A DNA stretch of 64,000 bases, taken from positions 186,001-250,000 of the IMG/VR virus record IMGVR_UViG_3300049793_000366. One strand, written 5' to 3'. Below the pieces are notes generated by a model that saw only the letters and a list, made by a program, of their open reading frames with translations, was not told the origin of the DNA and searched no databases. Each line of letters opens with the position of its first letter. Position 1 is the first letter of the stretch. Both the position numbers and the translations under genes were made by a program. This document shows, piece by piece, positions 9,014-38,764 of this stretch.

Positions 9014-9835
9014 TTACAATACTTTATTTAGTGATACTTCTCTGTGTGTTGATTTTATCACACCGGAGTTGTAATTACTATCATCATCTTCACTATAATG
9101 CTCGTCTATGAAATCTTGCCAGTCAGATAGGTCATTGTTATCGAAGATGAAGCCACGAGAGATTAGATTTTTAAATAGTGAAATATTTCCATCGGTGTCT
9201 TCTGCGTAACTATTATATGTCCACCCAATTTTCTCGTAGTCTATTTTTGCTGATTGGTATTCATATTGAATATCTGAGTTGGTTAGCTTTTTTCTTAACT
9301 TATTTAAAGAAGATTTACCTCTATTGTATATTTTATCTATTGCTGTACCAGTGAATTCTTTTACTTCTATATTAACATACTCTCTTGTGTTGTCTTTGTA
9401 GAAAATCTCATTTATGAATGTAAGAAACCCAGCGTTGAATAGCTCCCAAGCAGCATAGAATTCATTGTATTCGGTTTTTAATACTTCTTTTGCTAATTCC
9501 ATATCAACCCTACCATTATCGTCTATAACCCTATCCTTAGTGATTAATAGCCCTGATATGTCATATCCATCAAATCCGCAATAGCCATTTAAAGAACCTA
9601 TCCATTTATCTTTTAGATCCAAGATAACAATACCATATTGCGATGGTGATAGTGATTCTACATTCGATTTGTAGGAACTGTTGTTATAACCATTTAAATA
9701 CTGGTTGATATAGTTTTTATCACCAGTGTAGAATTTAAGAGTTTTTACGAAGCCAGGTAATGCATTTGTCCATCGCGATTGCTTATGAATCTTACCATCT
9801 TCTTCTCTTATTATAACTCGAATTTGTCCACCCAT
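9014..9835 (-). CDS. Hypothetical protein with C-terminal R[DE]xxLNxxL tag
   Basis: 273 aa; ends HREVSLNKVL. Confidence 0.6.
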   Translation of the reverse strand: MGGQIRVIIREEDGKIHKQSRWTNALPGFVKTLKFYTGDKNYINQYLNGYNNSSYKSNVESLSPSQYGIVILDLKDKWIGSLNGYCGFDGYDISGLLITKDRVIDDNGRVDMELAKEVLKTEYNEFYAAWELFNAGFLTFINEIFYKDNTREYVNIEVKEFTGTAIDKIYNRGKSSLNKLRKKLTNSDIQYEYQSAKIDYEKIGWTYNSYAEDTDGNISLFKNLISRGFIFDNNDLSDWQDFIDEHYSEDDDSNYNSGVIKSTHREVSLNKVL

Positions 9836-10293
9836 TAGTTCAGTAGGTCATTAAGTTTTTCATCGCGTACTAACTCTGGTGCTTCATCTAACCATTCAAC
9901 ATCCTTAGAATCTATCCAAGAGTTTTCGTATAAATTCTTCATCATTTCTTTATACGAATCTGTTGAGTATTCGCTTTGGTTGACTTGTATTTCTAATATA
10001 CCTATTTTGGATTTATCTTTAGACCTTTCAATCTCATATACCTCATAGACAACATCTATATTTGTTTTTCGTTTCGAGTCTCTATCAGTTGATGAAAGAC
10101 TTCTCTCCATCAAACCTTTTCTACCAGTACCTCTTAGTTGTACTGGTACGGGTTTACTCGGTAAGGTTGGTTGTTGTACGGGTTGTGGTTTTTGACCTTC
10201 AACCAATAGTTTCAAGTTTTTATTAATGCTTGAGAAACCTTGCATATTGGAGACGATGAAGCCTCCTATAAATCCTATTAACAAATATATCAT
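9835..10293 (-). CDS. Hypothetical membrane-anchored protein with C-terminal RD tag
   Basis: N-terminal hydrophobic segment; ends VRDEKLNDLLN. Confidence 0.65.
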   Translation of the reverse strand: MIYLLIGFIGGFIVSNMQGFSSINKNLKLLVEGQKPQPVQQPTLPSKPVPVQLRGTGRKGLMERSLSSTDRDSKRKTNIDVVYEVYEIERSKDKSKIGILEIQVNQSEYSTDSYKEMMKNLYENSWIDSKDVEWLDEAPELVRDEKLNDLLN

Positions 10294-10294
10294 A

Positions 10295-11446
10295 TTATAA
10301 AGAAAGAGTGCGTTTAAATACTGAACCTGGTACGACCTTAGTTGGTAATTCCTCGCGAATATGTTCTACCGGAATTTCTTCTAATTCTGGTATGTAATTA
10401 ATCAACTCTGCTCTCGTTCCGATAAATTCGAGAGAACCTTCTTTTGTATTACCCCAGCAAGTATTTCCGTTCCAATCAATGCTGTTATAGTCATTGATGT
10501 TTAACATCTTTTTGATTAGGTCAACTTCCTTAGCAATCCACGTTTTGGAGATATATGCTTTTACATTATCACCATCTTTGTTGATTACTTTTGTGTAATG
10601 CGTTGCTGACCACTCGTTGTAAACGTGTTTGTCTTTATCATAATAACCATAGGTTAAGTATGTATCGAATAGTAAATCATCGTCCTCTTCTTCCTCTATG
10701 AAATTAGGGTCGCGTTTTACAGGTAATGATTCCCAGTCTACTTTTACTGATGCTCTACATAAGTTTTGAAGATGTGTGATATCTTGTGATTCATCATATG
10801 TGTGTTCATCGTAGTAACCAACAGAGATATTGGTACACTCTGGTATCAATTCCATAAACTGTGCTGAGTCAGTAACAACACCAGTATCATCTGGTGAGTA
10901 TTTAAATGTTGACTCCGCATCATTTAATTGTTTACTTAAAGCTTCTGCGAATTCCTCAGAACAACAGCGACTATACATCTGATGTGTGATGATTGATTTT
11001 GTTCCGCGTCTATCGAATGATATTACTCGGTCAAATGGATATGTTTCCCATTTCTTACTTTCCTTTTGATTGAAAAAGTATTTAGCGAGTTTTTTAGATC
11101 CTTGACAACCGACTTCTTCTGCTAAGAAAAAGAAATAACAACCAGGTACTTCTTTCTCTATCATATAGAGCATTACGACCATACCAGCTTTATCGTCAGC
11201 ACCGAGAATAGAATTACCATCCGTGATTACGTGGCCTTCTTCAAATTCGTGGTTTACGTTCTTTTGTGTACAATCGGCTGTGTCGAGGTGACAAGTAAAT
11301 AGTGTTCTTGATTTTCCTACTTGAATATAGTAATTTCCGAAAGCATCAACTTTATAACCTTTTGGTAAATATGATTCGAGTTCTTTCTCGTGACCGCTTG
11401 GGTATGTCTTTCGAGTAAGTTGTAAAAACTTTCTTAATGGGCGCAT
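10295..11446 (-). CDS. M28/M20-clan zinc peptidase with C-terminal extension (start revised to ATG 11446)
   Basis: HLDT, LGADDKAG, AEEVG, SFDR, ECTNISVGYYDEHT zinc-ligand motifs; the listed TTG start lies upstream of a promoter at 11471-11502. Confidence 0.8.
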   Translation of the reverse strand: MRPLRKFLQLTRKTYPSGHEKELESYLPKGYKVDAFGNYYIQVGKSRTLFTCHLDTADCTQKNVNHEFEEGHVITDGNSILGADDKAGMVVMLYMIEKEVPGCYFFFLAEEVGCQGSKKLAKYFFNQKESKKWETYPFDRVISFDRRGTKSIITHQMYSRCCSEEFAEALSKQLNDAESTFKYSPDDTGVVTDSAQFMELIPECTNISVGYYDEHTYDESQDITHLQNLCRASVKVDWESLPVKRDPNFIEEEEDDDLLFDTYLTYGYYDKDKHVYNEWSATHYTKVINKDGDNVKAYISKTWIAKEVDLIKKMLNINDYNSIDWNGNTCWGNTKEGSLEFIGTRAELINYIPELEEIPVEHIREELPTKVVPGSVFKRTLSL

Positions 11447-11470
11447 GGGTGTCAAATTATTTATTTTACC

Positions 11471-11502
11471 CAAATATACGGACATTTTTTCTAATTTGCA
11501 AA
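11471..11502 (-). promoter_or_regulatory. Bacteroidota sigmaA-type promoter (TTTG-N20-TATATTTG)
   Basis: Minus strand TTTG caaattagaaaaaatGTCCg TATATTTG. Confidence 0.75.
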
Positions 11503-12006
11503 TCAATCTTCATCATCGAAGATTTGAGTAATCTTCGTGTCTCTTAGAAATTTACGTTGCCATTCATCCAGAGTTAGTTTTTCCTTGCTTTGCTTGTCTT
11601 CTATGAGCTTTTTCTCGCGTGTCTGACAATGATATACAAATTGATTAAAGTTGCTGTAATCAAGTCCCTGTGCGTTATCACCGACATTTAAAATTATTGG
11701 AATGGGTAATCTTTTCAAAAGATTTAAGTCCTTGTTTGTCAAGGTCTTAGACCTACCCCATATATCATCGATTATGATTAGGTCTACTCTAAAGGTGTGA
11801 TTATCAAGAATATCATCCAAATTATTTTTAATTTGAATCATTTTAATTTTAGCTGGTGATAGCGGGATTGATTTTATGCTATTGTTTGAATAAGTTAGAT
11901 ATAGTATGTTAGCCGCAGAGGCATAAAATGTACACAGGTCAAAAGTTATCGAATTGTCCTTTGGTGTCTTAGAAAAGAAAACATTTATGTGTCCAAGATT
12001 AATCAA
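11503..12006 (-). CDS. Hypothetical protein with C-terminal RD tag
   Basis: 167 aa; ends LRDTKITQIFDDED. Confidence 0.6.
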   Translation of the reverse strand: MINLGHINVFFSKTPKDNSITFDLCTFYASAANILYLTYSNNSIKSIPLSPAKIKMIQIKNNLDDILDNHTFRVDLIIIDDIWGRSKTLTNKDLNLLKRLPIPIILNVGDNAQGLDYSNFNQFVYHCQTREKKLIEDKQSKEKLTLDEWQRKFLRDTKITQIFDDED

Positions 12007-12340
12007 TTATATAGTCTATTTTTAAATCACGTTGATATACTTTTAGTGGTATCTCAATGAATATGTTATTTTCTTTCGTAGCATTTAACTTTAGAAAATC
12101 AATACTAAGATAAGACGAGTAATTATATTCGGTTATTCCGTTTTGGTTTTCAATACAGTTTAAAATCAATAGTGAAGAATCTTCGGGGTTAGTTGATAGA
12201 AACATTATATCACCCTCCATTGCTGTTACACACTCAGACTCGTGATAAGAGCAATCATCTTCATCGACTGTTACTGATATAGGTATATTAAATTCAAAGT
12301 TTGTCTTGAAGATAAATTCTATTTTACTTAAGTTTATCAT
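11999..12340 (-). CDS. Hypothetical protein with C-terminal RD tag
   Basis: 113 aa; ends QRDLKIDYIID. Confidence 0.6.
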   Translation of the reverse strand: MINLSKIEFIFKTNFEFNIPISVTVDEDDCSYHESECVTAMEGDIMFLSTNPEDSSLLILNCIENQNGITEYNYSSYLSIDFLKLNATKENNIFIEIPLKVYQRDLKIDYIID

Positions 12341-12881
12341 TCTTTTTTTGTTTAAAAAGTAAATATCTTGATGTTACATCAACCACGAATTTATTATCAG
12401 CGAGAAACTTTCTACCAATTAGTATAGGACATTTCATATTGCTTCTATTTGATAATGTAGCTTCTATAATGTAACGCTTACTACCCATATCTAAATTGGT
12501 CTTAATGAGATATCGAGTTTCAGATTCACCATTGGATGACTTAACTGTGGTTGTTGCAAAGTCTTTAGTTCTAAATTCTTTATCATTGAGTACATTGAAT
12601 ACTAGTTCATCACCATCTATTCTTATACTATGTGCGTTTATTGATGCTGAGTAAGCACCAGTGTCTATTTTAGCTTTAAGACCTATTATATCAAAGTCGG
12701 GTAACCCAACTTTCTCAGCGCGACCAATAAATTGGTAGTTTATATTCTCTGTTTCTTTCACGATAGATGAAGTATTTTGGTGGTTCAAGTTTCCCAGTTC
12801 GTAAGTTAATTCTAACTCCGAATCCAGTCCATGGTTGCTTCCATCGATAGGGTTGTTGAATAGTGAATTGTTGTTGTTCAT
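12324..12881 (-). CDS. Retropepsin-like aspartic protease of the RimK-associated ('ATP-dependent Zn protease') family; start revised to ATG 12881
   Basis: AKIDTGAYSASI...SSNGESETRY...TLSNRSNMKCPILIGRKFL; the listed start overlaps the -7 promoter element. Confidence 0.8.
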   Translation of the reverse strand: MNNNNSLFNNPIDGSNHGLDSELELTYELGNLNHQNTSSIVKETENINYQFIGRAEKVGLPDFDIIGLKAKIDTGAYSASINAHSIRIDGDELVFNVLNDKEFRTKDFATTTVKSSNGESETRYLIKTNLDMGSKRYIIEATLSNRSNMKCPILIGRKFLADNKFVVDVTSRYLLFKQKKNDKLK

Positions 12882-12923
12882 TCTTTCGTAAAAGTATAGA
12901 CTGCTGTGAGTATGATACTTTAG

Positions 12924-12954
12924 CAAATATAAGAAAAAATAAAATTAAAGTCAA
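12924..12954 (-). promoter_or_regulatory. Bacteroidota sigmaA-type promoter (TTG-N20-TATATTTG)
   Basis: Minus strand gTTG actttaattttattttttct TATATTTG. Confidence 0.7.
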
Positions 12955-13066
12955 CTTTTTCATAAGGCATGGACATTTTATTATTATATATCTAAAACAC
13001 AGTCAAAGTTTAACTTATAGAAAACAATCTTAAAAGTTAGAATATAAATTAAAAATAATAAACTAT

Positions 13067-15192: not shown

Positions 15193-15197
15193 TCTCC

Positions 15198-15206
15198 TAT
15201 ATATTA
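15198..15206 (-). promoter_or_regulatory. Putative late promoter TAATATATA
   Basis: Minus strand TAATATATA-GGAGA-ATG at 15192. Confidence 0.55.
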
Positions 15207-15247
15207 AATAAGTCAGAACAAAAACAAACTTAATAAATATAACACTT

Positions 15248-15748
15248 ATGGCAATAATGGCACCTCAACAACTTAATAACTTTGGTACGTACCATCATAC
15301 ATTATTTGACGTGGATAAGAATATCCCAGTACCTTGCTTGGTTGAAATGGAAATCAATAGTCAAGCTCAATACGGTGCTGTTGGTGTAAATAACCATCGT
15401 CCGGCTATACGCAGAGATGAATTGACTTTAACGGTGACTATCAATGCTGACATTGTACCAGATGCTACTTGGGCTATGGAATGGATAACAGATACATTTA
15501 ATGGTGCTGGATCTATGTTTAGTAATAAATATAAACGTTCACTGTTTGTAGCAAACGATAATTCTTATAACTCTGGTTTGTCTATATATGGTGCTTATGT
15601 CAAAACATATAGCAATGTCTGTGACTTCAATAACACAATTAAGCTTGAAATAGGATGCGACCATTTCACTGATAGTTTACCAATGGATGGATATTTCAAG
15701 TCAATTAGACGGGATGCTCAATTAAATCAATTATTTGATAATTTATAG
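15248..15748 (+). CDS. Hypothetical protein; tail-tube (gp19)-like fold with C-terminal RD tag
   Basis: W..W...G...KYKR.L.V...IYGAY...I.L.I.CDHF pattern typical of T4-like tube proteins; ends RRDAQLNQLFDNL. Confidence 0.45.
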   Translation: MAIMAPQQLNNFGTYHHTLFDVDKNIPVPCLVEMEINSQAQYGAVGVNNHRPAIRRDELTLTVTINADIVPDATWAMEWITDTFNGAGSMFSNKYKRSLFVANDNSYNSGLSIYGAYVKTYSNVCDFNNTIKLEIGCDHFTDSLPMDGYFKSIRRDAQLNQLFDNL

Positions 15749-16347: not shown

Positions 16348-18213
16348 TTACTTCACTTCTTCTGAATCTATATCAGTTACTTGCTGACCATCATCAGTTG
16401 GTGGTGTTTGTTCTTGATACATTCGTGTAGAAACATCATTCCAAACAGTGTTTAGACTTGCTAAATGAATATCAATTGCATCGATGTCTTTATTAGAATG
16501 AGCAGTTTTCAATTCAGCTAACGCAGTTTCTAATTTACTCTTATCATCTGCTGATAGTTTTTCACCAAATTCTTTAATTTGTTTTTCTGTTTGAAATATC
16601 ATACCATCTGCTTGATTTACTTTATCAATCTTTTCTTTTTCTAAACGGTCTGATTCAGCATTCGCTTCTGCTTCTTGTTTCATTCTCTCAATCTCTTCTT
16701 TTGAGAGTTGTGAGTTTCCTTCAATTCTTATTTTGTTTTCTTTGTTTGTAGCTTTGTCTTTTGCTGATACAGCGATGATACCATTTGCATCAATGTCAAA
16801 TGTAACTTCTACTTGTGGTACACCTCTTGGTGATGGTGGAATACCATCTAAGTGAAATCTACCAAGTGTTCTGTTATCTTTTGCTAACGGTCTCTCACCT
16901 TGTATAACATGAATCTCAACAGATGGTTGATTATCCGAAGCTGTTGAGAACGTTTCTGATTTCTTAGTTGGGATTGTTGTGTTAGCTTCAATTAATTTAG
17001 TCATAACACCACCCATTGTTTCAATGCCTAATGATAATGGTGTAACGTCTAATAGAAGAACGTCTGTAATGTCACCACTTAGTACTGAACCTTGAATAGC
17101 GGCACCAATGGCAACAACTTCATCTGGATTCACACCTTTGTTTGGTTTCTTGTTGAAGAATTTTTCAACAGCTTCTTGTATAGCAGGTATTCTTGTAGAA
17201 CCACCTACTAATATAATTTCATCAATATCGGATGGTTTTAAACCAGCATTTTTAAGTGCAGATTTACATGGTTCGATTGTTCTCTTTATTAGAGAGTCGG
17301 ATAGTTGTTCAAATTTAGAACGAGTTAATGATAGAACAAGATGTTTTGGTGTACCATCTACTGATGTGATGTATGGTAAATTAATATCAGTTTGTGATGT
17401 TGATGATAATTCGACCTTTGCTTTTTCAGCCGCCTCTTTCAATCTTTGTAATGCCATTGAATCCTGTTTCAAGTCGAAACCATTTTCTTTTTTGAATTCA
17501 TCTGCCATCCAATCAATGATAGCATTATCGAAATCGTCACCACCTAAGTGAGTATCACCATCGGTTGATTTTACTTCAAATACACCATCACCTAATTCTA
17601 AAACAGAAACGTCATGTGTACCACCACCGCAGTCGAACACAACTATTTTCATTTCCTTATCTGTCCTATTTAATCCGAATGCTAAAGCCGCGGCTGTTGG
17701 TTCGTTGATAATTCTTTCTACTTTTAATCCTGCAATTTCTCCGGCTTCGATTGTAGCTTTTCTTTCAGCATCACCGAAGTATGCTGGTACTGTTATAACA
17801 GCTCTTTTTATTTCTTGTCCTAAATAATCTTCTGCTGTCTTCTTCATTTTTTGAAGAATCATTGCTGATATTTCTTGTGATGTATAATTTCTATCACCTA
17901 TTTTTACAACTGGTACTGTTCCTGTTTTTTCTACAACGTAAGGAACACGCTTTATTTCACTCTTAATAGAATCAAAACTTCTACCAATGAATCTTTTGAT
18001 TGAGTATATTGTTTGTTCTGGATTAACAACTGCTTGACGTTTAGCTGTGTCGCCAATTTTTCTTTCGCCGTCTTTAGAGAATCCAACAATAGAAGGTGTT
18101 GTTCTTTTACCTTCTGAATTTGAGATAACAACTGGTTCACCGCCTTCAACAACGGCAACACATGAATTCGTTGTACCTAAGTCAATACCAATAATGTAGT
18201 CTTTTTTGCTCAT
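16348..18213 (-). CDS. dnaK: Molecular chaperone DnaK (Hsp70)
   Basis: [55 protein letters not shown], full substrate-binding domain. Confidence 0.98.
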
Positions 18214-19512: not shown

Positions 19513-19710
19513 ATGATAATAATTAAAATTGAAGAAAGTGGTTCTCTTGAGAAAGCTTTAAAGAAGTATAAAAGAAAAGTTGATAAAGTCAAACAAGTAA
19601 GAGAATTACGCGATAGACAAACTTTTGAAAAACCTTCTGTTAAGAAAAGAGAGAAGAAGAAAAAAGCGATTTACATCACTGAAAAGGAAAGACAGGAAAA
19701 TTTAGATTAA
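19513..19710 (+). CDS. rpsU: 30S ribosomal protein bS21
   Basis: IKIEE..SLEKALKKYKRKV......ELRDRQTFEKPSVKKR pattern, 65 aa, basic. Confidence 0.92.
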   Translation: MIIIKIEESGSLEKALKKYKRKVDKVKQVRELRDRQTFEKPSVKKREKKKKAIYITEKERQENLD

Positions 19711-21755: not shown

Positions 21756-21998
21756 ATGTTTAATTGGTTTTGGTCAATATTTAAGAAAAGAGAAACTCCG
21801 GTTGAACAAGCAAGGAGATTGGGGAAGAAATACATCAAATTAACAAGAGCCACAACTGGTGAGCCTGTTATAAAAAACGGGCTAATGTTCGTTATTGACG
21901 TAGCCTCAGATACAATGGTGTATATCCCAGTTGAAGAGTACGAGCGTTATAATAAGACATTCTCAAGAGACCAGAAACTTAACTCTATTTTAGACTAA
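21756..21998 (+). CDS. Hypothetical protein with C-terminal RD tag
   Basis: 80 aa; ends SRDQKLNSILD. Confidence 0.6.
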   Translation: MFNWFWSIFKKRETPVEQARRLGKKYIKLTRATTGEPVIKNGLMFVIDVASDTMVYIPVEEYERYNKTFSRDQKLNSILD

Positions 21999-25755: not shown

Positions 25756-26390
25756 TGGTCTAATTTATCCTTTAATTCTCTTAACTTATTTTCAAATATT
25801 AATTCATCGCGAGAGTTTGTGATACTGGATGCTACTAATAAATAGTCAGCTAATCCATTGTAGGATGCTATGTTATCAATAGATACACCAGAAGCAATTG
25901 CCATTGGATGATTACCTAAGAAAGAACGCAACTGTTGTATCTTAACTACTGTAGCCGCTTTACCTGTACCGGGACCGCTTGTTGTTGAAACATCAGTGGA
26001 TAGAATTGAATCTTTACACGCAGTTTCTAAATCAGTTGGTTGTGGTTGATATTTGAATGCTAATCCACCAAAGAATTGACCTCTGAATTCACGAATTGTA
26101 CTCGCTTCATATGGTGTAATACTTGAATCACACCATAAAGCATCAATTGGTATATCAAGTGCTAAAGCATCCATCGTAGATTTTCCTAATAGATTGACAC
26201 CGACCCAAATTTTATATTCTGATTTGATGTCTATTGCATTCTGAATAAGTCTCTCATGTACATCGGTTAGAGAGCTATTGTGGTCTATTAGAAATACTTT
26301 CTTTATACCACAAGATAAACAGGTCTCGATATTAATCTTAACCTGTTCGTCTGTTAGTTTATGTATTACTGGTATGATTTCAGTTTTCAT
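25752..26390 (-). CDS. BtpA/SgcQ-family TIM-barrel protein
   Basis: GVNLL, ALWCD, TTSGPGTG, IASGVS..N...Y...AD..LVASSI. Confidence 0.7.
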   Translation of the reverse strand: MKTEIIPVIHKLTDEQVKINIETCLSCGIKKVFLIDHNSSLTDVHERLIQNAIDIKSEYKIWVGVNLLGKSTMDALALDIPIDALWCDSSITPYEASTIREFRGQFFGGLAFKYQPQPTDLETACKDSILSTDVSTTSGPGTGKAATVVKIQQLRSFLGNHPMAIASGVSIDNIASYNGLADYLLVASSITNSRDELIFENKLRELKDKLDQ

Positions 26391-26559
26391 TCAATAAGAT
26401 ATTTAATGCGGTTTCTCTATTTTGCTTTGTTATGATTTCGTGTATTTGTTCTGTTGAACCACCTACATTATACCACTCTGATATTTGTTGACCCCAACCA
26501 TGCCTATCGGATTCATCCTTTATATAGACACTAAAGTTGGAAATGGTAGTTCTAATCAC
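26380..26559 (-). CDS. 59-aa hypothetical protein with C-terminal RE tag (below the ORF-track cutoff)
   Basis: GTG 26559 overlaps the upstream TAG; VIRTTISNFSVYIKDESDRHGWGQQISEWYNVGGSTEQIHEIITKQNRETALNILLNEN*; fills the gap in the operon. Confidence 0.6.
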   Translation of the reverse strand: MIRTTISNFSVYIKDESDRHGWGQQISEWYNVGGSTEQIHEIITKQNRETALNILLNEN

Positions 26560-26894
26560 TATCGAATAACTGTTTCGATATTCATGTCACGAATTTCTTC
26601 TTGTGTCATTGCTTTGTAGCGAGTCTCTTTGAACTCAAACGGAGCCGCGAAAGAAACTTTATCGAATTCAGAAGAATCGTGTGATGAATAATAACCTTCC
26701 ATTAAAACAAAAAGGTTTTCTTCCGGGAAAGAAAATGCAATGTTCCATTCATTACCGTCACCGTAGTGTTGGTCATAAACAACCTCGTGTTTGTTTTCCA
26801 TTTCATCATTTGAACCTTCATAATAAAGGTCTCTGAAAAATGATACGTTGTTCTTTTTAATCTTCTCGATTAGTTCTTGTCTTGTAAATTTCAT
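26559..26894 (-). CDS. Hypothetical protein with C-terminal RD tag
   Basis: GYYSSHD motif; ends EIRDMNIETVIR. Confidence 0.6.
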   Translation of the reverse strand: MKFTRQELIEKIKKNNVSFFRDLYYEGSNDEMENKHEVVYDQHYGDGNEWNIAFSFPEENLFVLMEGYYSSHDSSEFDKVSFAAPFEFKETRYKAMTQEEIRDMNIETVIR

Positions 26895-27577: not shown

Positions 27578-28741
27578 TTAATTCATTATCTTTACAAGGC
27601 CCTCTTCTCTATCATCCGATTTAATATCAGCCTTTATTCCGATAAGAAGTTCATTATCATCATCTTCATACTCCATGATTTTGTCAACAATAACTCCGCG
27701 ATATACCTTAAGTATGTCGTAGTGAAGTTTGTGGTCTTGGTCTTGGCTTCCGTAATTGGATGGGCAATATTTAGCATTTAGCCTTGATACGGTGCAGTTA
27801 AATCTTGCAAAGTCTGCTAATAGTTTACTGTCTAATTCGTCTACAACTTCGCCTAAGTTTCTGCTGTAATCACAAGTTTGTTTACCATCAAGTAATGCTT
27901 TAGATAACCAGCTACCGATTGTATCTTGTCCTTTGTAGGACTCTCTTCCACCACCGAATAGGCTAAGTTTAACTCTGAATGCTTTTTCAGTATCATCACC
28001 AGCTTCTTCTATTTCTTTTTTATGGTCAAGACGTAGTTGTTTACTTAATTGAACAGCTAAATCTAACTGACAAGTCTCTTTGTCTTCCTGTGTTAAGTTT
28101 GATTTATATGTACCCTTAGATACTGTCGTTAATGCTTCTTCCAATTGTGATGGATGATAGACACTTTGGTTTCTATCCTCTTTCCCGTTCTTCATCAGAT
28201 GCGACCATGTACCATCTGAGTGTACTTCATATTCAGTTGGTATTGTTGAGTTTCGCCAAATTTGTTTGAATCTTTCGTCACCACTTTCTTCATCTTGTTT
28301 AACAAAGCCCATCTTCTCTAACCAATATGGTGTGATGTAAGATTCGGTGTACGAATTTATTTTTCTACTGCTCATAAAGTCATAAACTTTTCTATGCTCT
28401 AAGCCGAATGTGAAGTCTTTATATACTGCTTTCAGTTTACCATCACTACCACGACCAACTGCTGAGTCGTCAATTATCTCAATGATACTATCGATTTTAT
28501 CACCAAAGAATTTTTCAATGAATTTTGTTGCTGGGTTATTAACAACATTTTCAATTCTACCATAATCATCATAGTCTCCGAATATTGGTAAAAATGCTGG
28601 CTCAAACCAGTCGGTTGAGTACGTGACTCCACCTAATTTTGAATCGCTGTATTTCGATTTCTTCATGAATACAAGCACAGTTGCGTCACCTGCGTGAATT
28701 GGTAATCCGGATATAAATCCGATTTTGTTAAAACATCCCAT
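27578..28741 (-). CDS. Hypothetical protein with C-terminal RE tag
   Basis: LPIFGDYDDYG motif; ends DDREEGLVKIMN. Confidence 0.6.
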   Translation of the reverse strand: MGCFNKIGFISGLPIHAGDATVLVFMKKSKYSDSKLGGVTYSTDWFEPAFLPIFGDYDDYGRIENVVNNPATKFIEKFFGDKIDSIIEIIDDSAVGRGSDGKLKAVYKDFTFGLEHRKVYDFMSSRKINSYTESYITPYWLEKMGFVKQDEESGDERFKQIWRNSTIPTEYEVHSDGTWSHLMKNGKEDRNQSVYHPSQLEEALTTVSKGTYKSNLTQEDKETCQLDLAVQLSKQLRLDHKKEIEEAGDDTEKAFRVKLSLFGGGRESYKGQDTIGSWLSKALLDGKQTCDYSRNLGEVVDELDSKLLADFARFNCTVSRLNAKYCPSNYGSQDQDHKLHYDILKVYRGVIVDKIMEYEDDDNELLIGIKADIKSDDREEGLVKIMN

Positions 28742-29150: not shown

Positions 29151-31040
29151 ATGAATGAATTAAAAGAGGGAGATGTTATTGTAGGACAAATTGACTTCAA
29201 TACCAACGGTAACGCTTATCTCAGCGTGGATGGACACGATGATGTGTACATCTATAAAAAGAACACTTTAAATGCTCTACACTTAGATACGGTTGAGGTT
29301 CAACTACTTATGAGAGAGGGTAAACTAGAAGGTGTTGTTAAAGAAGTAGTAGGTAGATTTAAAACTGAATGGGTTGGAACCGTTCAACGAAATAAGAATC
29401 TGGTATTTGTTTTACCAGATAGCAATAAAACCCCCGTAGACTTCTTCATTCCAGAAGATGCATCAATGGGTGCTAAAGATAAACAAAAGGTCGTGGTGAG
29501 ACTTATTAAGTGGAAAAAAGGCACTAAATCACCATTTGCTAAGATTATTAAAATTTTAGGTGAAGTAGGTGATAATAACACCGAAATGAATGCGATTATG
29601 TATGAGTATGGCTTGCCTGTTGAATTTCCGAAAGAAGTTGAATTAGAAGCTGAATTGATATCATTTGAAATTCCACCTACTGAGATTGCTAAACGTAGAG
29701 ACATGAGAAGTGTTACTACATTTACAATAGATCCGGTAGATGCGAGAGATTTTGATGATGCATTATCAGTTGAGGTTAAAGAAGACCATGTTGAAATTGG
29801 TGTTCACATCGCTGATGTAACTCACTATGTTAAACCAGGTACTAAATTAGAAGAAGAAGCAATTAAAAGAGCTACTTCTGTTTACTTGGTTGATAGATGT
29901 GTTCCGATGTTACCTGAGAGATTATCGAATGGTGTTTGTTCACTAAGACCACATGAAGAAAAATTGTGTTACTCTGTTATCTTTAAAATGGATTCAGAAG
30001 GTAATGTGTTAGATACATGGTATGGTCGTACTATAATCTATTCTGATAGAAGATTTAGTTATGAAGAAGCACAAGAAATAATTGAAGGCAAGGCTGGTGA
30101 TTTTTCTGATGAATTAACATTGTTCAATACTCTTGCTAAGAAAATCAGAGGACGTAGAATTAAAAGTGGTTCATTGGAAATGGATTCAGCAGAAGTGCGA
30201 TTTAGATTAGATGAACGCGGTAAACCACTTGATGTGTATTTTAAAATACAAAAGGATGCTAATAAATTAATTGAAGAGTTTATGTTGTTAGCTAATCAAG
30301 CAGTTGCTAAGATATTATCTGATAACTCATATAATTCAGTTTATAGAGTTCACGATAAACCAAGCCAAGAAAAATTAGAGGCACTTACTGGTGTTGCTAC
30401 TAACTTTGGTTATAAAGTTAATTTATATCAACCAGAGAAAATAAAAGAATCATTGAATAGTTTATTGGCCGAAATTAAAGGTAAACCAGAAGAGAATATG
30501 ATTTCTACTTTGGTTACAAGGTCAATGGCTAAAGCAACATATACAATTAAAAATATTGGGCATTATGGATTAGGCTTTACTCACTATTCACATTTCACAT
30601 CACCTATTAGACGATATCCTGATATGATGTCTCATAGATTACTTGATGATTATTTAACAAAGAAACCTAAGGGAAATCCTACTGTTGTTGAACAACAAGC
30701 TAAGTGGTCTTCTGAGAGAGAATTAATTGCGGCTAAAGCACAACGAGATTCTATTAAATATAAACAAGCTGAATATTTACAAGATAAAATTGGTAAAGTT
30801 TTCAAAGGTGTTGTATCTGGTGTTACTGATTGGGGAATGTATGTTGAGATAATTGAAAACAAATGTGAGGGTATGATTCGCTTTAAAGATATTGGTGATG
30901 ATATATTCATACCAGATGTAAACGCATATCAAGTTGTAGGTCATAAGACTGGTCAAATCATAAGATTGGGTGATGAGATAATGGTCAGTGTAGCTGGTGT
31001 TAATCTTGAAAAGAAGTCGATAGATTTAAAAGTATTCTAA
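29151..31040 (+). CDS. rnr: Ribonuclease R
   Basis: CSD domains; TIDPVDARDFDDALS (catalytic Asp); VHIADV; LIEEFMLLAN; HFTSPIRRYPD; C-terminal S1 domain. Confidence 0.95.
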   Translation: MNELKEGDVIVGQIDFNTNGNAYLSVDGHDDVYIYKKNTLNALHLDTVEVQLLMREGKLEGVVKEVVGRFKTEWVGTVQRNKNLVFVLPDSNKTPVDFFIPEDASMGAKDKQKVVVRLIKWKKGTKSPFAKIIKILGEVGDNNTEMNAIMYEYGLPVEFPKEVELEAELISFEIPPTEIAKRRDMRSVTTFTIDPVDARDFDDALSVEVKEDHVEIGVHIADVTHYVKPGTKLEEEAIKRATSVYLVDRCVPMLPERLSNGVCSLRPHEEKLCYSVIFKMDSEGNVLDTWYGRTIIYSDRRFSYEEAQEIIEGKAGDFSDELTLFNTLAKKIRGRRIKSGSLEMDSAEVRFRLDERGKPLDVYFKIQKDANKLIEEFMLLANQAVAKILSDNSYNSVYRVHDKPSQEKLEALTGVATNFGYKVNLYQPEKIKESLNSLLAEIKGKPEENMISTLVTRSMAKATYTIKNIGHYGLGFTHYSHFTSPIRRYPDMMSHRLLDDYLTKKPKGNPTVVEQQAKWSSERELIAAKAQRDSIKYKQAEYLQDKIGKVFKGVVSGVTDWGMYVEIIENKCEGMIRFKDIGDDIFIPDVNAYQVVGHKTGQIIRLGDEIMVSVAGVNLEKKSIDLKVF

Positions 31041-32046: not shown

Positions 32047-32055
32047 TATATATTA
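32047..32055 (-). promoter_or_regulatory. Putative late promoter TAATATATA
   Basis: Exact motif 4 nt upstream of ATG 32042. Confidence 0.55.
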
Positions 32056-32307
32056 GGATAGTAGCTTGTCTATATTCTCTTTTCTTTTTTCCATTTTGAT
32101 TTGTTCTGCTGTCTTTTTCGGTGGTTCTGAATTTAGCGTTACATCACTCATATATTCTCGTATGAAGTCTATGTAATAGTCTCTATCATTATAGCCTTCC
32201 TCTTCATCATCTGTTCTACTGAATGGGTCATAAATCATATCTTTCCACGTATTTTTCTTCTTTCCGTTGAACTTATCAAATAAGTTGTTAAAATGCTTAT
32301 CGTTCAT
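32053..32307 (-). CDS. Hypothetical protein with C-terminal RD-like tag
   Basis: 84 aa; ends KRKENIDKLLS. Confidence 0.6.
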   Translation of the reverse strand: MNDKHFNNLFDKFNGKKKNTWKDMIYDPFSRTDDEEEGYNDRDYYIDFIREYMSDVTLNSEPPKKTAEQIKMEKRKENIDKLLS

Positions 32308-32333
32308 AGCTTTTGTTTTATTAAATTCTATTG

Positions 32334-32341
32334 CAAATATA
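32334..32341 (-). promoter_or_regulatory. Bacteroidota -7 element TATATTTG (no clear -33)
   Basis: Upstream of ATG 32307; GGAC at 32361-32364 sits where the -33 element would be. Confidence 0.5.
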
Positions 32342-32372
32342 TGGATAAGTTTTTAATTCCGGACTTGGGTTT

Positions 32373-32381
32373 TAATATATA
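32373..32381 (+). promoter_or_regulatory. Putative late promoter TAATATATA
   Basis: Exact motif upstream of ATG 32404. Confidence 0.6.
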
Positions 32382-32403
32382 TGTCAATAAATAAAGGATA
32401 ACT

Positions 32404-33407: not shown

Positions 33408-33425
33408 TTTATTACTATATAATCC

Positions 33426-35014: not shown

Positions 35015-35463
35015 TAGATAAGATTAAAAAGGTCAAGGTGTAAATGAAAATGGTTCAAAACTAAAATCATCAATATTGCTGATTTTATTGTTAGATAAAT
35101 GTATGAGATATATTTGTTTAGGTCGTTACATTTCTTGTTTAGTATTTTACCGATTATGTTTTGTATTATCTGTACAAAAAATGCAAAAATAAATAGCATA
35201 GCAAATACTTTCCAACTACCTGATATTAAACCCAATATACACCAGATTAATTCTGATAGTGCTATAAATCCAGTGAACATACCAGCGTTGTAATCGTCAC
35301 TTGTTCTATAATCTGCTTTTTTGGGAGAGCGTTTGTTTATTTTCTTAAAGGCTTCTGCCCATTCTGCTACCTTCCAAGTCTTGTGGTGATTGAAAAGATT
35401 GATTAAATCCAATAGGAATATGAATAATCCGATAGCGTAAAATATGTGTCCAAGTGTCTGCAT
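35014..35463 (-). CDS. Hypothetical multi-pass membrane protein
   Basis: Four hydrophobic segments. Confidence 0.65.
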   Translation of the reverse strand: MQTLGHIFYAIGLFIFLLDLINLFNHHKTWKVAEWAEAFKKINKRSPKKADYRTSDDYNAGMFTGFIALSELIWCILGLISGSWKVFAMLFIFAFFVQIIQNIIGKILNKKCNDLNKYISYIYLTIKSAILMILVLNHFHLHLDLFNLI

Positions 35464-35512
35464 TATAATTGTTTTATCTCATTATATAAAATGAGAGTTT
35501 ATAGTTTACATA

Positions 35513-35544
35513 CAAATATATGGACTTTTTTACTAAACGCCAAA
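35513..35544 (-). promoter_or_regulatory. Bacteroidota sigmaA-type promoter (TTTG-N20-TATATTTG)
   Basis: Minus strand TTTG gcgtttagtaaaaaaGTCCa TATATTTG. Confidence 0.75.
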
Positions 35545-35577
35545 TATTTGTCCAAAATCATATAGGAGTTCAGTTTT

Positions 35578-35586
35578 TAATATATA
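35578..35586 (+). promoter_or_regulatory. Putative late promoter TAATATATA
   Basis: Exact motif upstream of ATG 35609. Confidence 0.6.
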
Positions 35587-35608
35587 GAAACAAATCTAAC
35601 TAACAGCT

Positions 35609-38320
35609 ATGGCAGTGACCCCATTATATAAAGCATTAAAGTCAAATGGTACATCATTCTATGCTTTTCCTGGTGCAGCAGAAGATATTTCAGCAGCATA
35701 TCAGAACGAAAATTATAGGATGTATTTCTCAAAATTTGTTCTTCTTAATTTCCCTAAACAGAATTTAAATCCAGGAACGATGTCAAACCCAGTACAATGG
35801 GATTTTGAGAATAGCTTTGTTAAGTCCAACTTATCGGTTGCTTCTGACTACGCTGACCAGTTAGTTGAATCTCTTAGAAACTACGTTGCTAACCATGAGG
35901 TTACAATCAGAGATTCGAAGTTAAATAATACTGAATTTTTCTATGATAATAATCAATTATCAACAACGACTGAGAAGATTTTTTGGAAATGGTGTACTAA
36001 ATTAAATGTACTTGACTTAGAAAGAGCAGTACCAGGTGATGAGTACTTTGATAATTTACAAGAATTTGAAGCTAATAATATTGCGGATGATACATACTTC
36101 CCTGAGATACTATGGCGCGAGAGAGAGGTTATTGATTTTAGACCAGTTTATTTTTATCAAACTGGATATGGTACTTATTCATTAGGTCAGTTTTTAGAGA
36201 TTGAGTTTCAAGGTTCTACTAACTTTAGAGATGGTGATAAAATAGTATTTAGTGATATTTCAAACTCATCTCTTATTGTAGATGGTGTTTATGATGGATT
36301 CCAAGTTGATATTTTAAAAGTACTTCCAGCAGGTGCTACCGCTGGTGATAAAATAATTGTTGATTTAGTTTATACATCATCAACTGAGATTGAAACGATT
36401 GGTACTGCTAAGATAGTTTATAGTAGATTAGTTCAGTATATCGGTGAAGTAAATGGTATAAATAACGTACAAGAAGCTAATCGCTCTTATACAGAGGTTT
36501 ATGCTCACATCCCGGATCACACTGGTAAAACACCGGATATTTTATTTAGAACAAAAGTTGATGTTAACTATAAGCCGAATATGATTTATCCGATATTACC
36601 ATCTCAATTTCAACCTGAGATTATCGGAGCAGAAAACTTCAACTCTCCTATTGTTAATACGCCACAGAATTATCCAGGTGACTTCTACGGTCAGTTTGAT
36701 ACAGATGATTTCACATATGAAACATCTTCTGGTGACTCTCTTAGAAGAAGCGGTGATTACTTTGGTGTACAGGGTGATTTAAATGCGCCTATTTATAGCC
36801 CATCTACTTTAGATGGTTTATGTGTTGACTTTGATAGAACACATTACGTTAAGATGAATGTTATTGACAGAGAACTTAATACGTTCGATGAATTCAATGC
36901 TCTTAGTGTAAATGGTCAACCACCAGAAGATTTCGAATTTAATGCTATTCTTTGGTACTACACTGTTGAAGATGCTGTTAAGGGTGGTATTACTACAAAT
37001 ATGTATGGTATTACATTCTTAAATCATCCTAAACAAAATGTTGCTTATGAAGATGATAAACCATTAGTTAGAATAAAGTTACCTTCTTACAAGAAGTTAG
37101 TTGCTAATGATGGACAAGATGGTACATCATACGCATTCAGTTTGAATTTGAACTTCAATATCATAAATGATAATCCACAAGATACGTATAATCCGACTGC
37201 TATAAATTCGTTATTTAGTATGAATTTATTCAACGAGGCTATGAAGAGATTGGCTGAGTCTAATGATTCATTCATGAAGCTTAATGCTAATTATACTGGT
37301 GTAGTTGAGGATATTGATGGTTTAAGAGGTTTGTTATATACACAAACTGATTTTGCTACAATCAATTCGAGAATGTCTTTCTTAGAATCTCTATTGAATG
37401 CTTATCAATCAATGCAGTTACAAAGCTCTGATACTATTGAGGTTCAAACGAATTTATCAACATCACCGCCTTTGGTTCAGTTGATGTCTAAGGATGCAAC
37501 TTACTATAAAATTGAAAAAGTTAATACAACTGATTTATATAATACATCAGGTATAATACCTTTAAATATCAATGTACCAACTAATAAGAATTTCTTAGTT
37601 AATATTATTAACAATGACCAAACACAATTCACACTTGCGTCAAACACAAGATTAACAGTTGTTTTGGATAGAGATTTAGATTATAGACAATCAGTTGATA
37701 TCGTTATTACTGCTGATGACTTCGCAACACAAAATAAAGAATTGGATATTTATATCAAGTTTTATGATGGTTCACCAAACGGCTTACCTGTTGAGACACC
37801 ATTGATTACTAAAGTTAATTTACCAGTTTTCTATAACCAGTCTACTCAAGATTTATCAATTTCTAAGAAGTGGGACCAGACTATAATTTACCCAGTATTG
37901 GATGATGTAGCAAGACCTATATTAATCAATTCTGATGTAACTATGGATATTCCAGTATCGGTTGCTAACCTATCTAATATGGTTAAAGCTGGTGATACAT
38001 TCTTGGTTAATAATTTAATTATTGATCCGATTTCACCGACTGATTATTCTGGACAATATGTGGTTAAGGCTGTGTCATCAACTATGTCAACATCTACAAT
38101 TAAATTAGATATTTCTGATAAAGTTGAATTGGTTCAGTATGGTATATCAACATCTCAAATTACTGGTTATCCAGTTGAGATACATGGTACATCATCAGCA
38201 TTAGCTTCTATGCCTTCTCTTACTTTCAATAAAGGAGTTAAGTATAGAGTTACGAGAGTTGACCAATTTGATGCGTCTTCTTTATCGGCTCGTTATTTAA
38301 TTGAGAAGATTCTAAACTAA
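35609..38320 (+). CDS. Large putative virion structural protein (baseplate/tail)
   Basis: 903 aa, beta-rich, late motif upstream; no enzymatic motifs recognised. Confidence 0.55.
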   Translation: MAVTPLYKALKSNGTSFYAFPGAAEDISAAYQNENYRMYFSKFVLLNFPKQNLNPGTMSNPVQWDFENSFVKSNLSVASDYADQLVESLRNYVANHEVTIRDSKLNNTEFFYDNNQLSTTTEKIFWKWCTKLNVLDLERAVPGDEYFDNLQEFEANNIADDTYFPEILWREREVIDFRPVYFYQTGYGTYSLGQFLEIEFQGSTNFRDGDKIVFSDISNSSLIVDGVYDGFQVDILKVLPAGATAGDKIIVDLVYTSSTEIETIGTAKIVYSRLVQYIGEVNGINNVQEANRSYTEVYAHIPDHTGKTPDILFRTKVDVNYKPNMIYPILPSQFQPEIIGAENFNSPIVNTPQNYPGDFYGQFDTDDFTYETSSGDSLRRSGDYFGVQGDLNAPIYSPSTLDGLCVDFDRTHYVKMNVIDRELNTFDEFNALSVNGQPPEDFEFNAILWYYTVEDAVKGGITTNMYGITFLNHPKQNVAYEDDKPLVRIKLPSYKKLVANDGQDGTSYAFSLNLNFNIINDNPQDTYNPTAINSLFSMNLFNEAMKRLAESNDSFMKLNANYTGVVEDIDGLRGLLYTQTDFATINSRMSFLESLLNAYQSMQLQSSDTIEVQTNLSTSPPLVQLMSKDATYYKIEKVNTTDLYNTSGIIPLNINVPTNKNFLVNIINNDQTQFTLASNTRLTVVLDRDLDYRQSVDIVITADDFATQNKELDIYIKFYDGSPNGLPVETPLITKVNLPVFYNQSTQDLSISKKWDQTIIYPVLDDVARPILINSDVTMDIPVSVANLSNMVKAGDTFLVNNLIIDPISPTDYSGQYVVKAVSSTMSTSTIKLDISDKVELVQYGISTSQITGYPVEIHGTSSALASMPSLTFNKGVKYRVTRVDQFDASSLSARYLIEKILN

Positions 38321-38368
38321 TACGATTAAAATTAGTATTTATATAATAAATTTATTATATTTGTCCTA

Positions 38369-38764
38369 ATGTTATATATCATATTAGTTATAATTTTTGT
38401 CCGTTCGGCATATGTTCTTTATCAGAATTATCGATTTGATAAATTCACTAAGAACGTCAGCGAATTTTTAATTGGTCAGAATTTACATCTTATGCCAAAT
38501 TTATGGAATTCCAAATCTATGAGAATGGATGAGCTTCCATTGCCAAAATTATCAATAGATAATATAAATCTGTGTGATATCATAGTTAAACCAATAGTAT
38601 CGGAAAAAACCAATACAGTAGAAGCGTATATTTTTACTTGGTCTAAGAAACTTACCAACTTTGATATACTTATGGGCTATAACATGACTCATAAGAAGAT
38701 AGATAGTATAAAACTCGATAAGGGAGAAATTCGAGATAAAAACATTGATAGATTACTGCAATGA
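38369..38764 (+). CDS. Hypothetical membrane-anchored protein with C-terminal RD tag
   Basis: N-terminal TM; ends EIRDKNIDRLLQ. Confidence 0.6.
   Translation: MLYIILVIIFVRSAYVLYQNYRFDKFTKNVSEFLIGQNLHLMPNLWNSKSMRMDELPLPKLSIDNINLCDIIVKPIVSEKTNTVEAYIFTWSKKLTNFDILMGYNMTHKKIDSIKLDKGEIRDKNIDRLLQ

What the first reader, a model, noticed from the sequence alone, without database searches (positions are those of the whole stretch)
9014..38764. Unrecognised C-terminal tag R-[DE]-x-[KN]-[IL]-[ND]-x-[ILV]-[ILF] on 11 unrelated proteins
Seen in sequence: these otherwise dissimilar proteins end, 0-4 residues before the stop, in REVSLNKVL (9014-9835), RDEKLNDLLN (9835-10293), RDTKITQIFDDED (11503-12006), RDLKIDYIID (11999-12340), RDAQLNQLFDNL (15248-15748), RDQKLNSILD (21756-21998), RETALNILLNEN (26380-26559), RDMNIETVIR (26559-26894), REEGLVKIMN (27578-28741), RKENIDKLLS (32053-32307) and RDKNIDRLLQ (38369-38764). 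The codons differ (cgc/aga/cgt/cga for Arg), so conservation is at the protein level and this is not a DNA repeat. Hydrophobic residues at positions 5, 8 and 9 fit an amphipathic helix. Two carriers are predicted membrane-anchored, most are soluble, and one has a tube-like fold. I know no published name for the motif. Inference: a genome-wide docking or degradation tag. It could be a ligand for one phage hub protein (clamp, SSB, RNAP factor or compartment scaffold), or a degron read by the phage ClpP with a host or phage unfoldase to time early-protein turnover.
Basis: partly seen in the sequence, partly recalled or inferred. Interest (0 to 1): 0.9.

Follow-up and report, generated by a model that had tools for sequence, protein, structure and literature searches.

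The report
Shared C-terminal tag in huge phages
About one in eight proteins of this roughly 700-kb bacteriophage and its relatives, all small and of unknown function, end in the same short peptide, which looks like an undescribed address or destruction label read by one still unidentified partner.

Summary
All 11 window proteins end in R-[DE]-x-[KNQ]-[IL]-x-x-[ILV]-[ILFM], 0-4 residues before the stop. Codons differ, and shuffles expect 0.02 such ends. The extended consensus is K-x3-R-[DE]-x-K-[IL]-[NKD]-x-[IL]-[LIF]-x(0-8)-COOH.

In related huge phages, 136 of 1968 proteins near the phage Hsp70 gene carry it (about 1 expected). So do 126 of 968 genes (13%) of the complete 635-kb genome LR745206.1, and 17-30% of genes in two blocks of LR756502.1. 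T4 and a Lak phage sample have none.

At least 51 unrelated families carry it, and orthologues keep it while their bodies diverge. Carriers are soluble, fast-evolving and never match a Pfam family. They lack the ATATATA-core element found before structural genes. No T4-like replication or structural homologue carries the tag.

The window encodes ClpP. LR745206.1 also encodes a second ClpP, a ClpC-like unfoldase and ClpS.

My best reading (confidence 0.35) is a genome-encoded degradation tag for non-late accessory proteins. A non-proteolytic docking or sorting signal is nearly as likely. The receptor is unknown, and I found no published description.

The parts
9017..9043 (-). tag core REVSLNKVL, last 9 residues of the 273-aa ORF 9014-9835
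   Evidence: PSSM 17.1
9841..9867 (-). tag core RDEKLNDLL (+N) of the 152-aa ORF 9835-10293
   Evidence: PSSM 21.8; a weak LR745206 homologue is also tagged
11518..11544 (-). tag core RDTKITQIF (+DDED) of the 167-aa ORF 11503-12006
   Evidence: PSSM 17.1
12005..12031 (-). tag core RDLKIDYII (+D) of the 113-aa ORF 11999-12340
   Evidence: PSSM 18.6
15710..15736 (+). tag core RDAQLNQLF (+DNL) of the 166-aa ORF 15248-15748
   Evidence: PSSM 23.0
21966..21992 (+). tag core RDQKLNSIL (+D) of the 80-aa ORF 21756-21998
   Evidence: PSSM 18.7; the orthologue in L100 (55% identity) keeps RDYKLVSLL; TAAGTTTG lies 33 nt upstream
26392..26418 (-). tag core RETALNILL (+NEN) of the 59-aa ORF 26380-26559
   Evidence: PSSM 11.7, the weakest of the 11
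26565..26591 (-). tag core RDMNIETVI (+R) of the 111-aa ORF 26559-26894
   Evidence: all 26 orthologues keep it and R102 is invariant; in the AF2 model the tail has pLDDT 67 against 77-94 for the body
27584..27610 (-). tag core REEGLVKIM (+N) of the 387-aa ORF 27578-28741
   Evidence: most orthologues down to about 37% identity keep D-D-R-[DE]-[DE]-x-[IL]-x-x-[IL]-[LI], while distant homologues lack it; the AF2 model has a terminal helix at 364-386 with pLDDT about 70
32059..32085 (-). tag core RKENIDKLL (+S) of the 84-aa ORF 32053-32307
   Evidence: PSSM 22.1; TATATTTG lies 26 nt upstream
38732..38758 (+). tag core RDKNIDRLL (+Q) of the 131-aa ORF 38369-38764, the only carrier with a clear TM-like N-terminus
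   Evidence: (PSSM 25.2); TATATTTG lies 5 nt upstream
3407..4066 (-). phage ClpP, candidate proteolytic component of the tag reader (inferred, not shown)
   Evidence: Pfam CLP_protease, E = 6e-68; the closest relatives are in the tag-rich genomes LR756502, LR745206 and LR756504
16348..18213 (-). phage Hsp70/DnaK homologue, rival candidate reader (inferred, not shown)
   Evidence: Pfam HSP70 in the precomputed gene list; conserved at 67-85% identity in 79 related loci

Best explanation
The peptide K-x3-R-[DE]-x-K-[IL]-x-x-[IL]-[LIF], placed 0-8 residues from the C-terminus, is a genome-encoded recognition tag. It is a short, flexible amphipathic helix attached to dozens of unrelated, soluble, fast-evolving accessory proteins. 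These proteins are expressed outside the structural (late) gene class. All copies are read by one common partner. My preferred mechanism is a degradation signal. The phage's own Clp machine would engage the tag, directly or through an adaptor, and clear this class of proteins once they have done their job. That machine is ClpP, encoded in this window, together with the N-domain-less ClpC/ClpA-like unfoldase and ClpS that tag-rich relatives encode. What is shown: the tag exists, is strongly selected, is restricted to C-termini, is proteome-wide and is limited to one gene class, and the lineage encodes Clp parts.
For: C-terminal enrichment is more than 100-fold. The window has 10-11 C-terminal hits against 0.02 expected. 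Loci near Hsp70 have 136 of 1968 proteins against about 1 expected. LR745206.1 has 126 of 968 against about 1.7 expected. At least 51 BLAST-unrelated families carry the tag. Orthologues keep it: fam1 16 of 17, the 111-aa family 26 of 26, and most members of the 387-aa family down to about 37% identity. In that family a conservation island sits after a variable linker. The tail is predicted helical with lower confidence than the body. Carriers are soluble: 1 of 51 families is TM-like, against 215 of 1594 non-carriers. No carrier matches a Pfam family above its cut-off. Few carriers are conserved: 2 of 11 have an LR745206 homologue, against 44 of 75 non-carriers, p = 0.02. Carriers are not in the late class. 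The ATATATA-core element that precedes the gp23, gp18, gp17, gp20 and gp4 homologues precedes 4 of 54 carriers against 172 of 482 non-carriers, p = 6e-6. A host sigma-A-like TAnnTTTG box is enriched before carriers: 14 of 54 against 49 of 482, p = 0.003. Clp parts are present: ClpP in the window; two ClpP, a double-AAA+ unfoldase with a VGF ClpP-docking-type loop conserved in 75 of 81 homologues, and ClpS in LR745206.1.
Against: There is no binding, stability or localisation data. Classical ClpXP/ClpAP C-degrons such as ssrA need nonpolar last residues and the free carboxylate. Here the last residues are polar and variable, and the spacing to the end varies from 0 to 8. That pattern looks more like docking on a folded domain. 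The phage unfoldase lacks the Clp_N domain that usually binds adaptors and peptides. The unfoldase is more widespread than the tag: loci with 57-64% identical unfoldases have 1 carrier in 601 genes. Lak phage has ClpP but no tag in a 50-kb sample. I did not show that the window's own genome encodes the unfoldase or ClpS. All co-occurrence evidence comes from one clade, so any clade-conserved gene, such as Hsp70, fits equally well.
Confidence: 0.35

Rival explanations
1. The tag is a non-proteolytic docking motif. It tethers many small effector-like proteins to one hub. The hub could be a host machine (RNA polymerase, ribosome, nucleoid) or a phage scaffold, and tethering would concentrate or regulate the proteins there.
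For: The invariant Arg plus an acidic residue, on the same helical face as three aliphatic residues, and the variable distance to the terminus, are typical of peptide-in-groove docking. Carriers look like accessory or host-takeover proteins: small, without Pfam matches, fast-evolving and not late. A bactofilin gene lies just right of the window.
Against: More than 120 different ligands for a single site would compete heavily. No candidate hub was identified. The clamp or replisome version is disfavoured because the gp43, gp44, gp41, UvsX, gp46/47, gp39 and gp32 homologues, RNase H and the UvsW-like helicase all lack the tag.
Confidence: 0.3
2. The tag is a sorting signal. It loads cargo into a compartment or into the capsid for co-injection, by analogy with encapsulin cargo-loading peptides, the T4 capsid-targeting sequence and microcompartment encapsulation peptides.
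For: A tag on 13-30% of genes is the scale of a sorting code. Carriers are orphan proteins, as phage internal or ejected proteins often are. Terminal amphipathic helices are used for shell loading elsewhere (established knowledge).
Against: Carriers almost never have the promoter-like element found before capsid, portal, sheath and terminase genes, so they are unlikely to be made with proheads. No structural homologue carries the tag. No upstream protease-site pattern was consistent across families. Replication proteins lack the tag, which argues against a nucleus-like import signal.
Confidence: 0.15
3. The tag is a client tag for the phage-encoded Hsp70. A specialised DnaK homologue would recognise one peptide, as HscA recognises LPPVK in IscU, to fold or hold these proteins.
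For: Hsp70 is encoded in the middle of the carrier-rich region and is conserved across the clade. The motif has Leu/Ile flanked by Lys/Arg, the general taste of DnaK (established knowledge).
Against: The acidic residue at position 2 and the helical periodicity do not fit extended-peptide binding by DnaK. Loci whose Hsp70 is 67-72% identical have few carriers. All those loci were chosen by the presence of Hsp70, so this is not an independent test.
Confidence: 0.1
4. The tail is a shared structural element with no common partner. It could be a terminal helix that stabilises or oligomerises small proteins, spread by recombination among rapidly evolving genes.
For: Carriers are clustered: LR745206 has 32 adjacent pairs against 16 expected. 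Long one-strand arrays occur in LR756502, as expected for local duplication or recombination.
Against: The bodies are unrelated and the codons differ. The tail is separated from the fold by a coil or variable linker and has lower model confidence. An invariant Arg across at least 51 families is hard to explain without a common reader.
Confidence: 0.07

Closest known systems
C-terminal degrons of AAA+ proteases (ssrA tag, MuA C-terminus; ClpXP/ClpAP)
   Same: A short peptide at the C-terminus of unrelated proteins. A Clp protease is encoded by the same lineage. Such a tag can mark a whole class of proteins for removal.
   Different: The ssrA tag is added by tmRNA and ends in nonpolar residues with a required free carboxylate. 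This tag is gene-encoded, has an invariant Arg and an acidic residue, ends in variable polar residues, and sits 0-8 residues from the end. ARAGORN found no tmRNA in the window or in LR745206.1.
PIP-box and clamp-binding tails (Q-x-x-[LIM]-x-x-[FY]-[FY]; C-terminal gp45-binding tails of T4 gp43, gp33, gp55)
   Same: C-terminal position. Hydrophobic residues at i, i+3 and i+4. One hub with many ligands.
   Different: There is no Gln, and the hydrophobic residues are aliphatic, not aromatic. No carrier is a recognisable replication or repair protein, and the replication homologues lack the tag.
Encapsulin cargo-loading peptides, the T4 capsid-targeting sequence and microcompartment encapsulation peptides
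   Same: Short terminal peptides, often amphipathic helices, that address unrelated cargo to one protein shell. The T4 and encapsulin shells share the HK97 fold.
   Different: The consensus differs. The T4 signal is N-terminal and cleaved. Carriers here are not in the structural-gene promoter class.
Clp components noted in jumbo phages (Iyer et al. 2021, PMC7824862)
   Same: That survey reports ClpP, ClpS, ClpA and ClpX genes in some jumbo phages.
   Different: It interprets them as acting on host proteins or in virion assembly. It describes no tag on phage proteins.

Membership tests
ssrA-like ClpXP/ClpAP C-degron | Nonpolar last 2-3 residues at the extreme C-terminus, with the free carboxylate required | tested here: not met
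   The residues after the motif are mostly N, K, D, G or Q, and the motif ends 0-8 residues from the terminus.
ssrA-like ClpXP/ClpAP C-degron | A cognate AAA+ protease is available | tested here: inconclusive
   ClpP is in the window. Two ClpP, a ClpC-like unfoldase with a VGF loop and ClpS are in LR745206.1. The unfoldase was not located in the window's own genome.
ssrA-like ClpXP/ClpAP C-degron | The tag is sufficient to destabilise a reporter | not testable with these tools
   This needs an experiment.
PIP-box / sliding-clamp-binding motif | Consensus Q-x-x-[LIM]-x-x-[FY]-[FY], or QL[SD]LF, or the T4-type hydrophobic tail | tested here: not met
   The position frequencies show R-[DE]-x-K-[IL]-x-x-[IL]-[LIF], with no Gln and aromatic residues only as a minority Phe at position 9.
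PIP-box / sliding-clamp-binding motif | Carried by replication and repair enzymes | tested here: not met
   The gp43 (split), gp44, gp41, UvsX, gp46, gp47 and gp39 homologues, and the window's gp32, RNase H and helicase, all lack it.
Capsid or encapsulin cargo-targeting peptide | Cargo is co-expressed with the shell and present in particles | tested here: inconclusive
   Carriers lack the element found before capsid, portal and sheath genes, which argues against co-expression. Virion content is not testable here.
Any curated protein domain (Pfam, PHROGs) or solved structure | A significant profile match covering the tail | tested here: not met
   No Pfam or PHROG family covers the tail. The tail profile against PDB sequences gave only chance hits at E of 1 or more.

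The most novel reading that the evidence does not exclude
A lineage of 600-700-kb phages encodes a proteome-scale address code. One C-terminal peptide on roughly an eighth of its proteins, up to a third in some genome blocks, is read by a phage-encoded machine. The most likely reader is the phage's own ClpC-like/ClpP1P2/ClpS protease. This would give the virus programmed, class-wide control over the lifetime or location of its accessory proteins.
Probability: 0.35. Interest if true: 0.9.

Novelty: new variant of a known kind. Interest (0 to 1): 0.8.

Why it matters
Terminal recognition peptides such as degrons, clamp ligands and cargo signals are known. I am not aware of one shared by more than 100 unrelated proteins of a single virus. 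My literature searches found no description of this motif.

If the tag is a degron, it would be a virus-encoded, class-wide post-translational timing system, alongside the known transcriptional and mRNA-level switches of T4-type phages. If it is a docking or sorting code, it points to an unknown hub or compartment in the largest known phages.

Either way, it labels about 13% of the 'dark matter' genes of these genomes as one functional class. It also offers a ready-made 9-14-residue handle for pull-downs and reporter assays.

Tried and rejected
- **Tail profile against 1.84 billion representative proteins.** It gave no hit at E of 0.001 or better.
- **Tail profile against PDB sequences.** Only chance hits.
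- **Weak 'Gp23' and 'Portal_T4' matches among small carriers.** The Gp23 match is residues 7-47 of the 66-aa protein L041:5031-5231, scores 19.4 bits against a cut-off of 24.4, and does not cover the tail. I dropped it. The Portal_T4 member was not traced.
- **T4 late promoter TATAAATA.** Not enriched in the window: 16 found against 15 expected.
- **The ClpP-adjacent 429-aa gene 4620-5909 as a possible Clp adaptor.** Its alignment shows motifs of the HAD hydrolase type, so I rejected it.
- **Fold searches of the 387-aa carrier.** No PDB match. The BFVD matches are uncharacterised proteins of T4-like phages.
- **Host identification through genome contigs.** Only distant relatives in unrelated MAGs.
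- **Rosetta-stone idea from the internal tag in L018 and L025.** It is a read-through fusion of a small tagged gene to the neighbouring dCMP deaminase.
- **tmRNA as a source of a related tag.** None found.
- **ClpP relatives in IMG/VR by peptide patterns.** The search was too insensitive to use for co-occurrence.
- **PF28363, which is precomputed for distant homologues of the 387-aa carrier.** It is not in the Pfam copy available here.


Full report
**What the window is.** The window is positions 186,001-250,000 of IMG/VR contig UViG_3300049793_000366. That contig is part of a 711,805-bp JGI contig. GC content is about 32%. It is a T4-related huge phage. The window encodes gp32, a gp13-like adaptor, a gp5-like baseplate hub and a UvsW-like helicase. 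It also encodes ClpP, Hsp70, ribosomal protein bS21, ThyA, FolD, DHFR, RNase H and an RNB exoribonuclease. By nucleotide search, its nearest deposited relatives are the 635-kb and 642-kb metagenomic phage genomes LR745206.1 and LR756502.1.

**Check of the observation.** Arg is encoded by five different codons, and the tails share no DNA repeat. In a greedy non-overlapping set of 86 ORFs, the pattern R[DE]..[IL]..[ILV][ILFM] occurs 10 times within 4 residues of a C-terminus and once internally. Shuffled proteins give a mean of 0.019 C-terminal hits. Apart from the tail, the proteins are unrelated by BLAST. None matches a Pfam family.

**The motif is wider and longer than reported.** I fetched 79 loci from related phages around the Hsp70 gene. 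There, 136 of 1968 proteins carry the tag within 8 residues of the end. The internal hit rate (21 hits in 362,439 windows) predicts about one. Two positions that were not used to find the carriers are also conserved: K at +4 and K at -4. D is frequent at -8. The conserved residues at offsets -8, -4, 0, +4 and +8 therefore lie on one face of a helix of about 17 residues. The carriers fall into at least 51 families that BLAST does not connect.

**Orthologues keep the tag.**
- Family 1 has the tag in 16 of 17 members. Apparent exceptions in other families carry variants such as R-N-x-N-L-D-K-L-L or R-D-x-K-L-x-x-x-L.
- All 26 orthologues of the window's 111-aa carrier (46-81% identity) keep it, and the Arg is invariant.
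- Most orthologues of the 387-aa carrier, down to about 37% identity, keep D-D-R-[DE]-[DE]-x-[IL]-x-x-[IL]-[LI] after a variable acidic linker. More distant homologues end in acidic tails instead.
- In a syntenic 709-kb NCBI contig, two carrier orthologues are 55-61% identical and still tagged, while most neighbouring genes are 70-91% identical.

**Scale.** I read the complete genome LR745206.1 in 50-kb pieces.
- 126 of 968 called genes (13%) carry the tag, against about 1.7 expected. Carriers are spread over the whole genome, with dense and sparse blocks. Adjacent carrier pairs number 32 against 16 expected.
- Two 50-kb samples of LR756502.1 have 31 of 103 and 19 of 110 tagged genes. Many of these use a variant ending L-G-I-COOH.
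- A sample of LR756504.1 has 6 of 73.
- Samples of T4 and of the Prevotella phage Lak-C1 have none.
- Around gp32 in relatives, the frequency is 41 of 1295.
- In the window it is 11 of 86. Three more carriers lie immediately to the left of the window.

**What kind of proteins carry it.**
- They are short, with a median of about 115-130 residues.
- They are almost never membrane proteins: 1 of 51 families is TM-like, against 13.5% of other proteins.
- None of about 70 family representatives and large members scanned reaches a Pfam threshold, including a 731-residue one. About a third of the window's other genes do. By my hand count the contrast is 0 of 11 against 24 of 75, p = 0.03.
- They turn over quickly. 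Two of eleven have a homologue in LR745206.1, against 44 of 75 other genes. Both homologues are tagged.
- No T4-like replication homologue (gp43, gp44, gp41, UvsX, gp46, gp47, gp39) carries the tag. Neither does any structural homologue (gp4, gp5, gp17, gp18, gp20, gp23). The window's gp32, RNase H and helicase also lack it.
- AlphaFold2 models of two window carriers are confident (pLDDT about 85). In both, the tag lies in a terminal helical segment of lower confidence, after a coil or a second helix. The 387-residue body matches no solved structure. It resembles only uncharacterised proteins of T4-like phages.

**Expression class (indirect evidence).** The window has 15 exact copies of TTAATATATA. 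Fourteen are intergenic and lie 4-29 nt before a same-strand start. The genes they precede include the operon that ends in the baseplate hub. The remaining copy lies inside my ORF call for the gp13-like gene, just upstream of the start called in the JGI gene list. In LR745206.1, the gp23, gp18, gp17, gp20 and gp4 homologues each have an ATATATA-core element upstream. This element precedes 172 of 482 non-carriers with their own upstream gap, but only 4 of 54 carriers, p = 6e-6. Narrower forms of the element give 0 of 54 and 0 of 56. A TAnnTTTG box, the -7 element of Bacteroidota sigma-A promoters (established knowledge), is enriched before carriers: 14 of 54 against 49 of 482. In the window it precedes carriers 21756, 32053 and 38369, and also the 12926-to-9014 operon that holds four carriers. 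I infer that carriers are not late genes and are probably early ones. Orthologous genes are counted repeatedly in the multi-locus test. The single-genome test does not have that problem.

**Candidate readers.** The window's ClpP is authentic, with Pfam E = 6e-68. Its closest relatives are in the three tag-bearing huge genomes. LR745206.1 encodes several Clp parts:
- two ClpP paralogues;
- a 701-residue double-AAA+ protein (AAA, AAA_lid_9, a UVR-like motif, AAA_2, ClpB_D2-small) without a Clp_N domain;
- a ClpS homologue.

The unfoldase has a V-G-F tripeptide in its second AAA+ module, conserved in 75 of 81 homologues. This is the type of loop that docks Clp ATPases onto ClpP (established knowledge). 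So the lineage has a complete protease of its own.

Against a tight link, more than 576 IMG/VR contigs encode this unfoldase. The tag is found beside it only where the unfoldase is at least 65% identical to that of LR745206.1 (26 carriers in 684 genes). At 57-64% identity there is 1 carrier in 601 genes. I could not establish whether the window's own genome has the unfoldase. Hsp70 is an equally clade-wide candidate. A survey of jumbo phages notes ClpP, ClpS, ClpA and ClpX genes but no tag on phage proteins (PMC7824862).

**Verdict.** The tag is a selected, C-terminal, proteome-scale recognition peptide of one gene class in a clade of huge phages. Its reader and its effect are unknown. I rank the readings as follows:

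| Reading | Confidence |
|---|---|
| Clp-dependent degron | 0.35 |
| Non-proteolytic hub-docking motif | 0.30 |
| Sorting or packaging signal | 0.15 |
| Hsp70 client tag | 0.10 |
| Partner-less structural helix | 0.07 |

It fails the defining features of ssrA-type degrons, PIP or clamp motifs and known cargo peptides. It should therefore not be filed under any of them, although it may work like one.

Noticed in passing
window 511, 4605, 5932, 7924, 15198(-), 19499, 24154, 32372, 35577, 46683(-), 47508(-), 49592(-), 51854, 56997, 60804(-): There are 15 exact copies of TTAATATATA. Fourteen are intergenic, at two preferred distances (4-5 nt or 19-29 nt) before a same-strand start codon. With one mismatch allowed, 52 sites are found against 34 expected. 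Related ATATATA-core elements precede the capsid, portal, sheath and terminase homologues in LR745206.1. This is probably the late or middle promoter of this lineage. The 4-5 nt class would imply near-leaderless mRNAs.
   Followed up: partly
window 16348-18213 (-), 19513-19710 (+), 29151-31040 (+), 3407-4066 (-); bactofilin at about window 64834-65178 (L085:17824-18168): The phage encodes Hsp70/DnaK, ribosomal protein bS21, an RNase II/R-type (RNB) exoribonuclease and ClpP. Just outside the window it encodes a bactofilin.
   Followed up: partly
window 4620-5909 (+): This 429-aa protein lies divergent from ClpP, and the same pairing occurs in LR745206.1. It has more than 1300 homologues, all unnamed and without a Pfam match. 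Its alignment shows motifs of the HAD hydrolase type (DWDDN, TARGH, GFSDDD).
   Followed up: partly
L018:2687-3286 and L025:4225-4839: A small tagged protein is fused in frame to the downstream dCMP deaminase. The tag then sits internally, exactly at the junction (…RDKKINQLLN-MDK…).
   Followed up: yes
L175 and L176 (LR756502.1 590-640 kb and 1-50 kb): Long same-strand arrays of small tagged genes. Eleven of 50 carriers, and also 21 of 163 proteins scored as non-carriers, end in [LIVM]-G-[ILVF]-COOH. This is the same tripeptide type as the ClpP-docking loop of Clp ATPases. The resemblance is untested.
   Followed up: partly
window 27578-28741 (-) and homologues P0038-P0061: Distant homologues of the 387-aa carrier (precomputed family PF28363) lack the tag, and many end in strongly acidic tails such as …EDEDEQED instead.
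   Followed up: no
window 43629-44597 (-): The gp32 homologue ends in an acidic, aromatic tail (…TDEDDFFDV), like the protein-recruiting tails of SSB and T4 gp32.
   Followed up: no
window 61196-62812 (-), residue 202: This is the only internal regex match (RDSKIDAII). It lies inside the UvsW-like DEAD/ResIII helicase and is probably chance.
   Followed up: partly
window about 4556-4618: A perfect hairpin (GAGCCTG-n6-CAGGCTC flanked by A/T runs) lies between a doubtful minus-strand ORF and the HAD-like gene. It looks like a terminator.
   Followed up: no
whole contig: The JGI source contig is 711,805 bp, but the IMG/VR entry holds only its last 507,910 bp. A syntenic NCBI contig (GCA_040384045.1, JAWVHH010000009.1) is 709,085 bp, so the true genome is probably about 710 kb. 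LR745206.1 carries 59 tRNA genes in clusters and no tmRNA. The window has no tRNA gene.
   Followed up: partly
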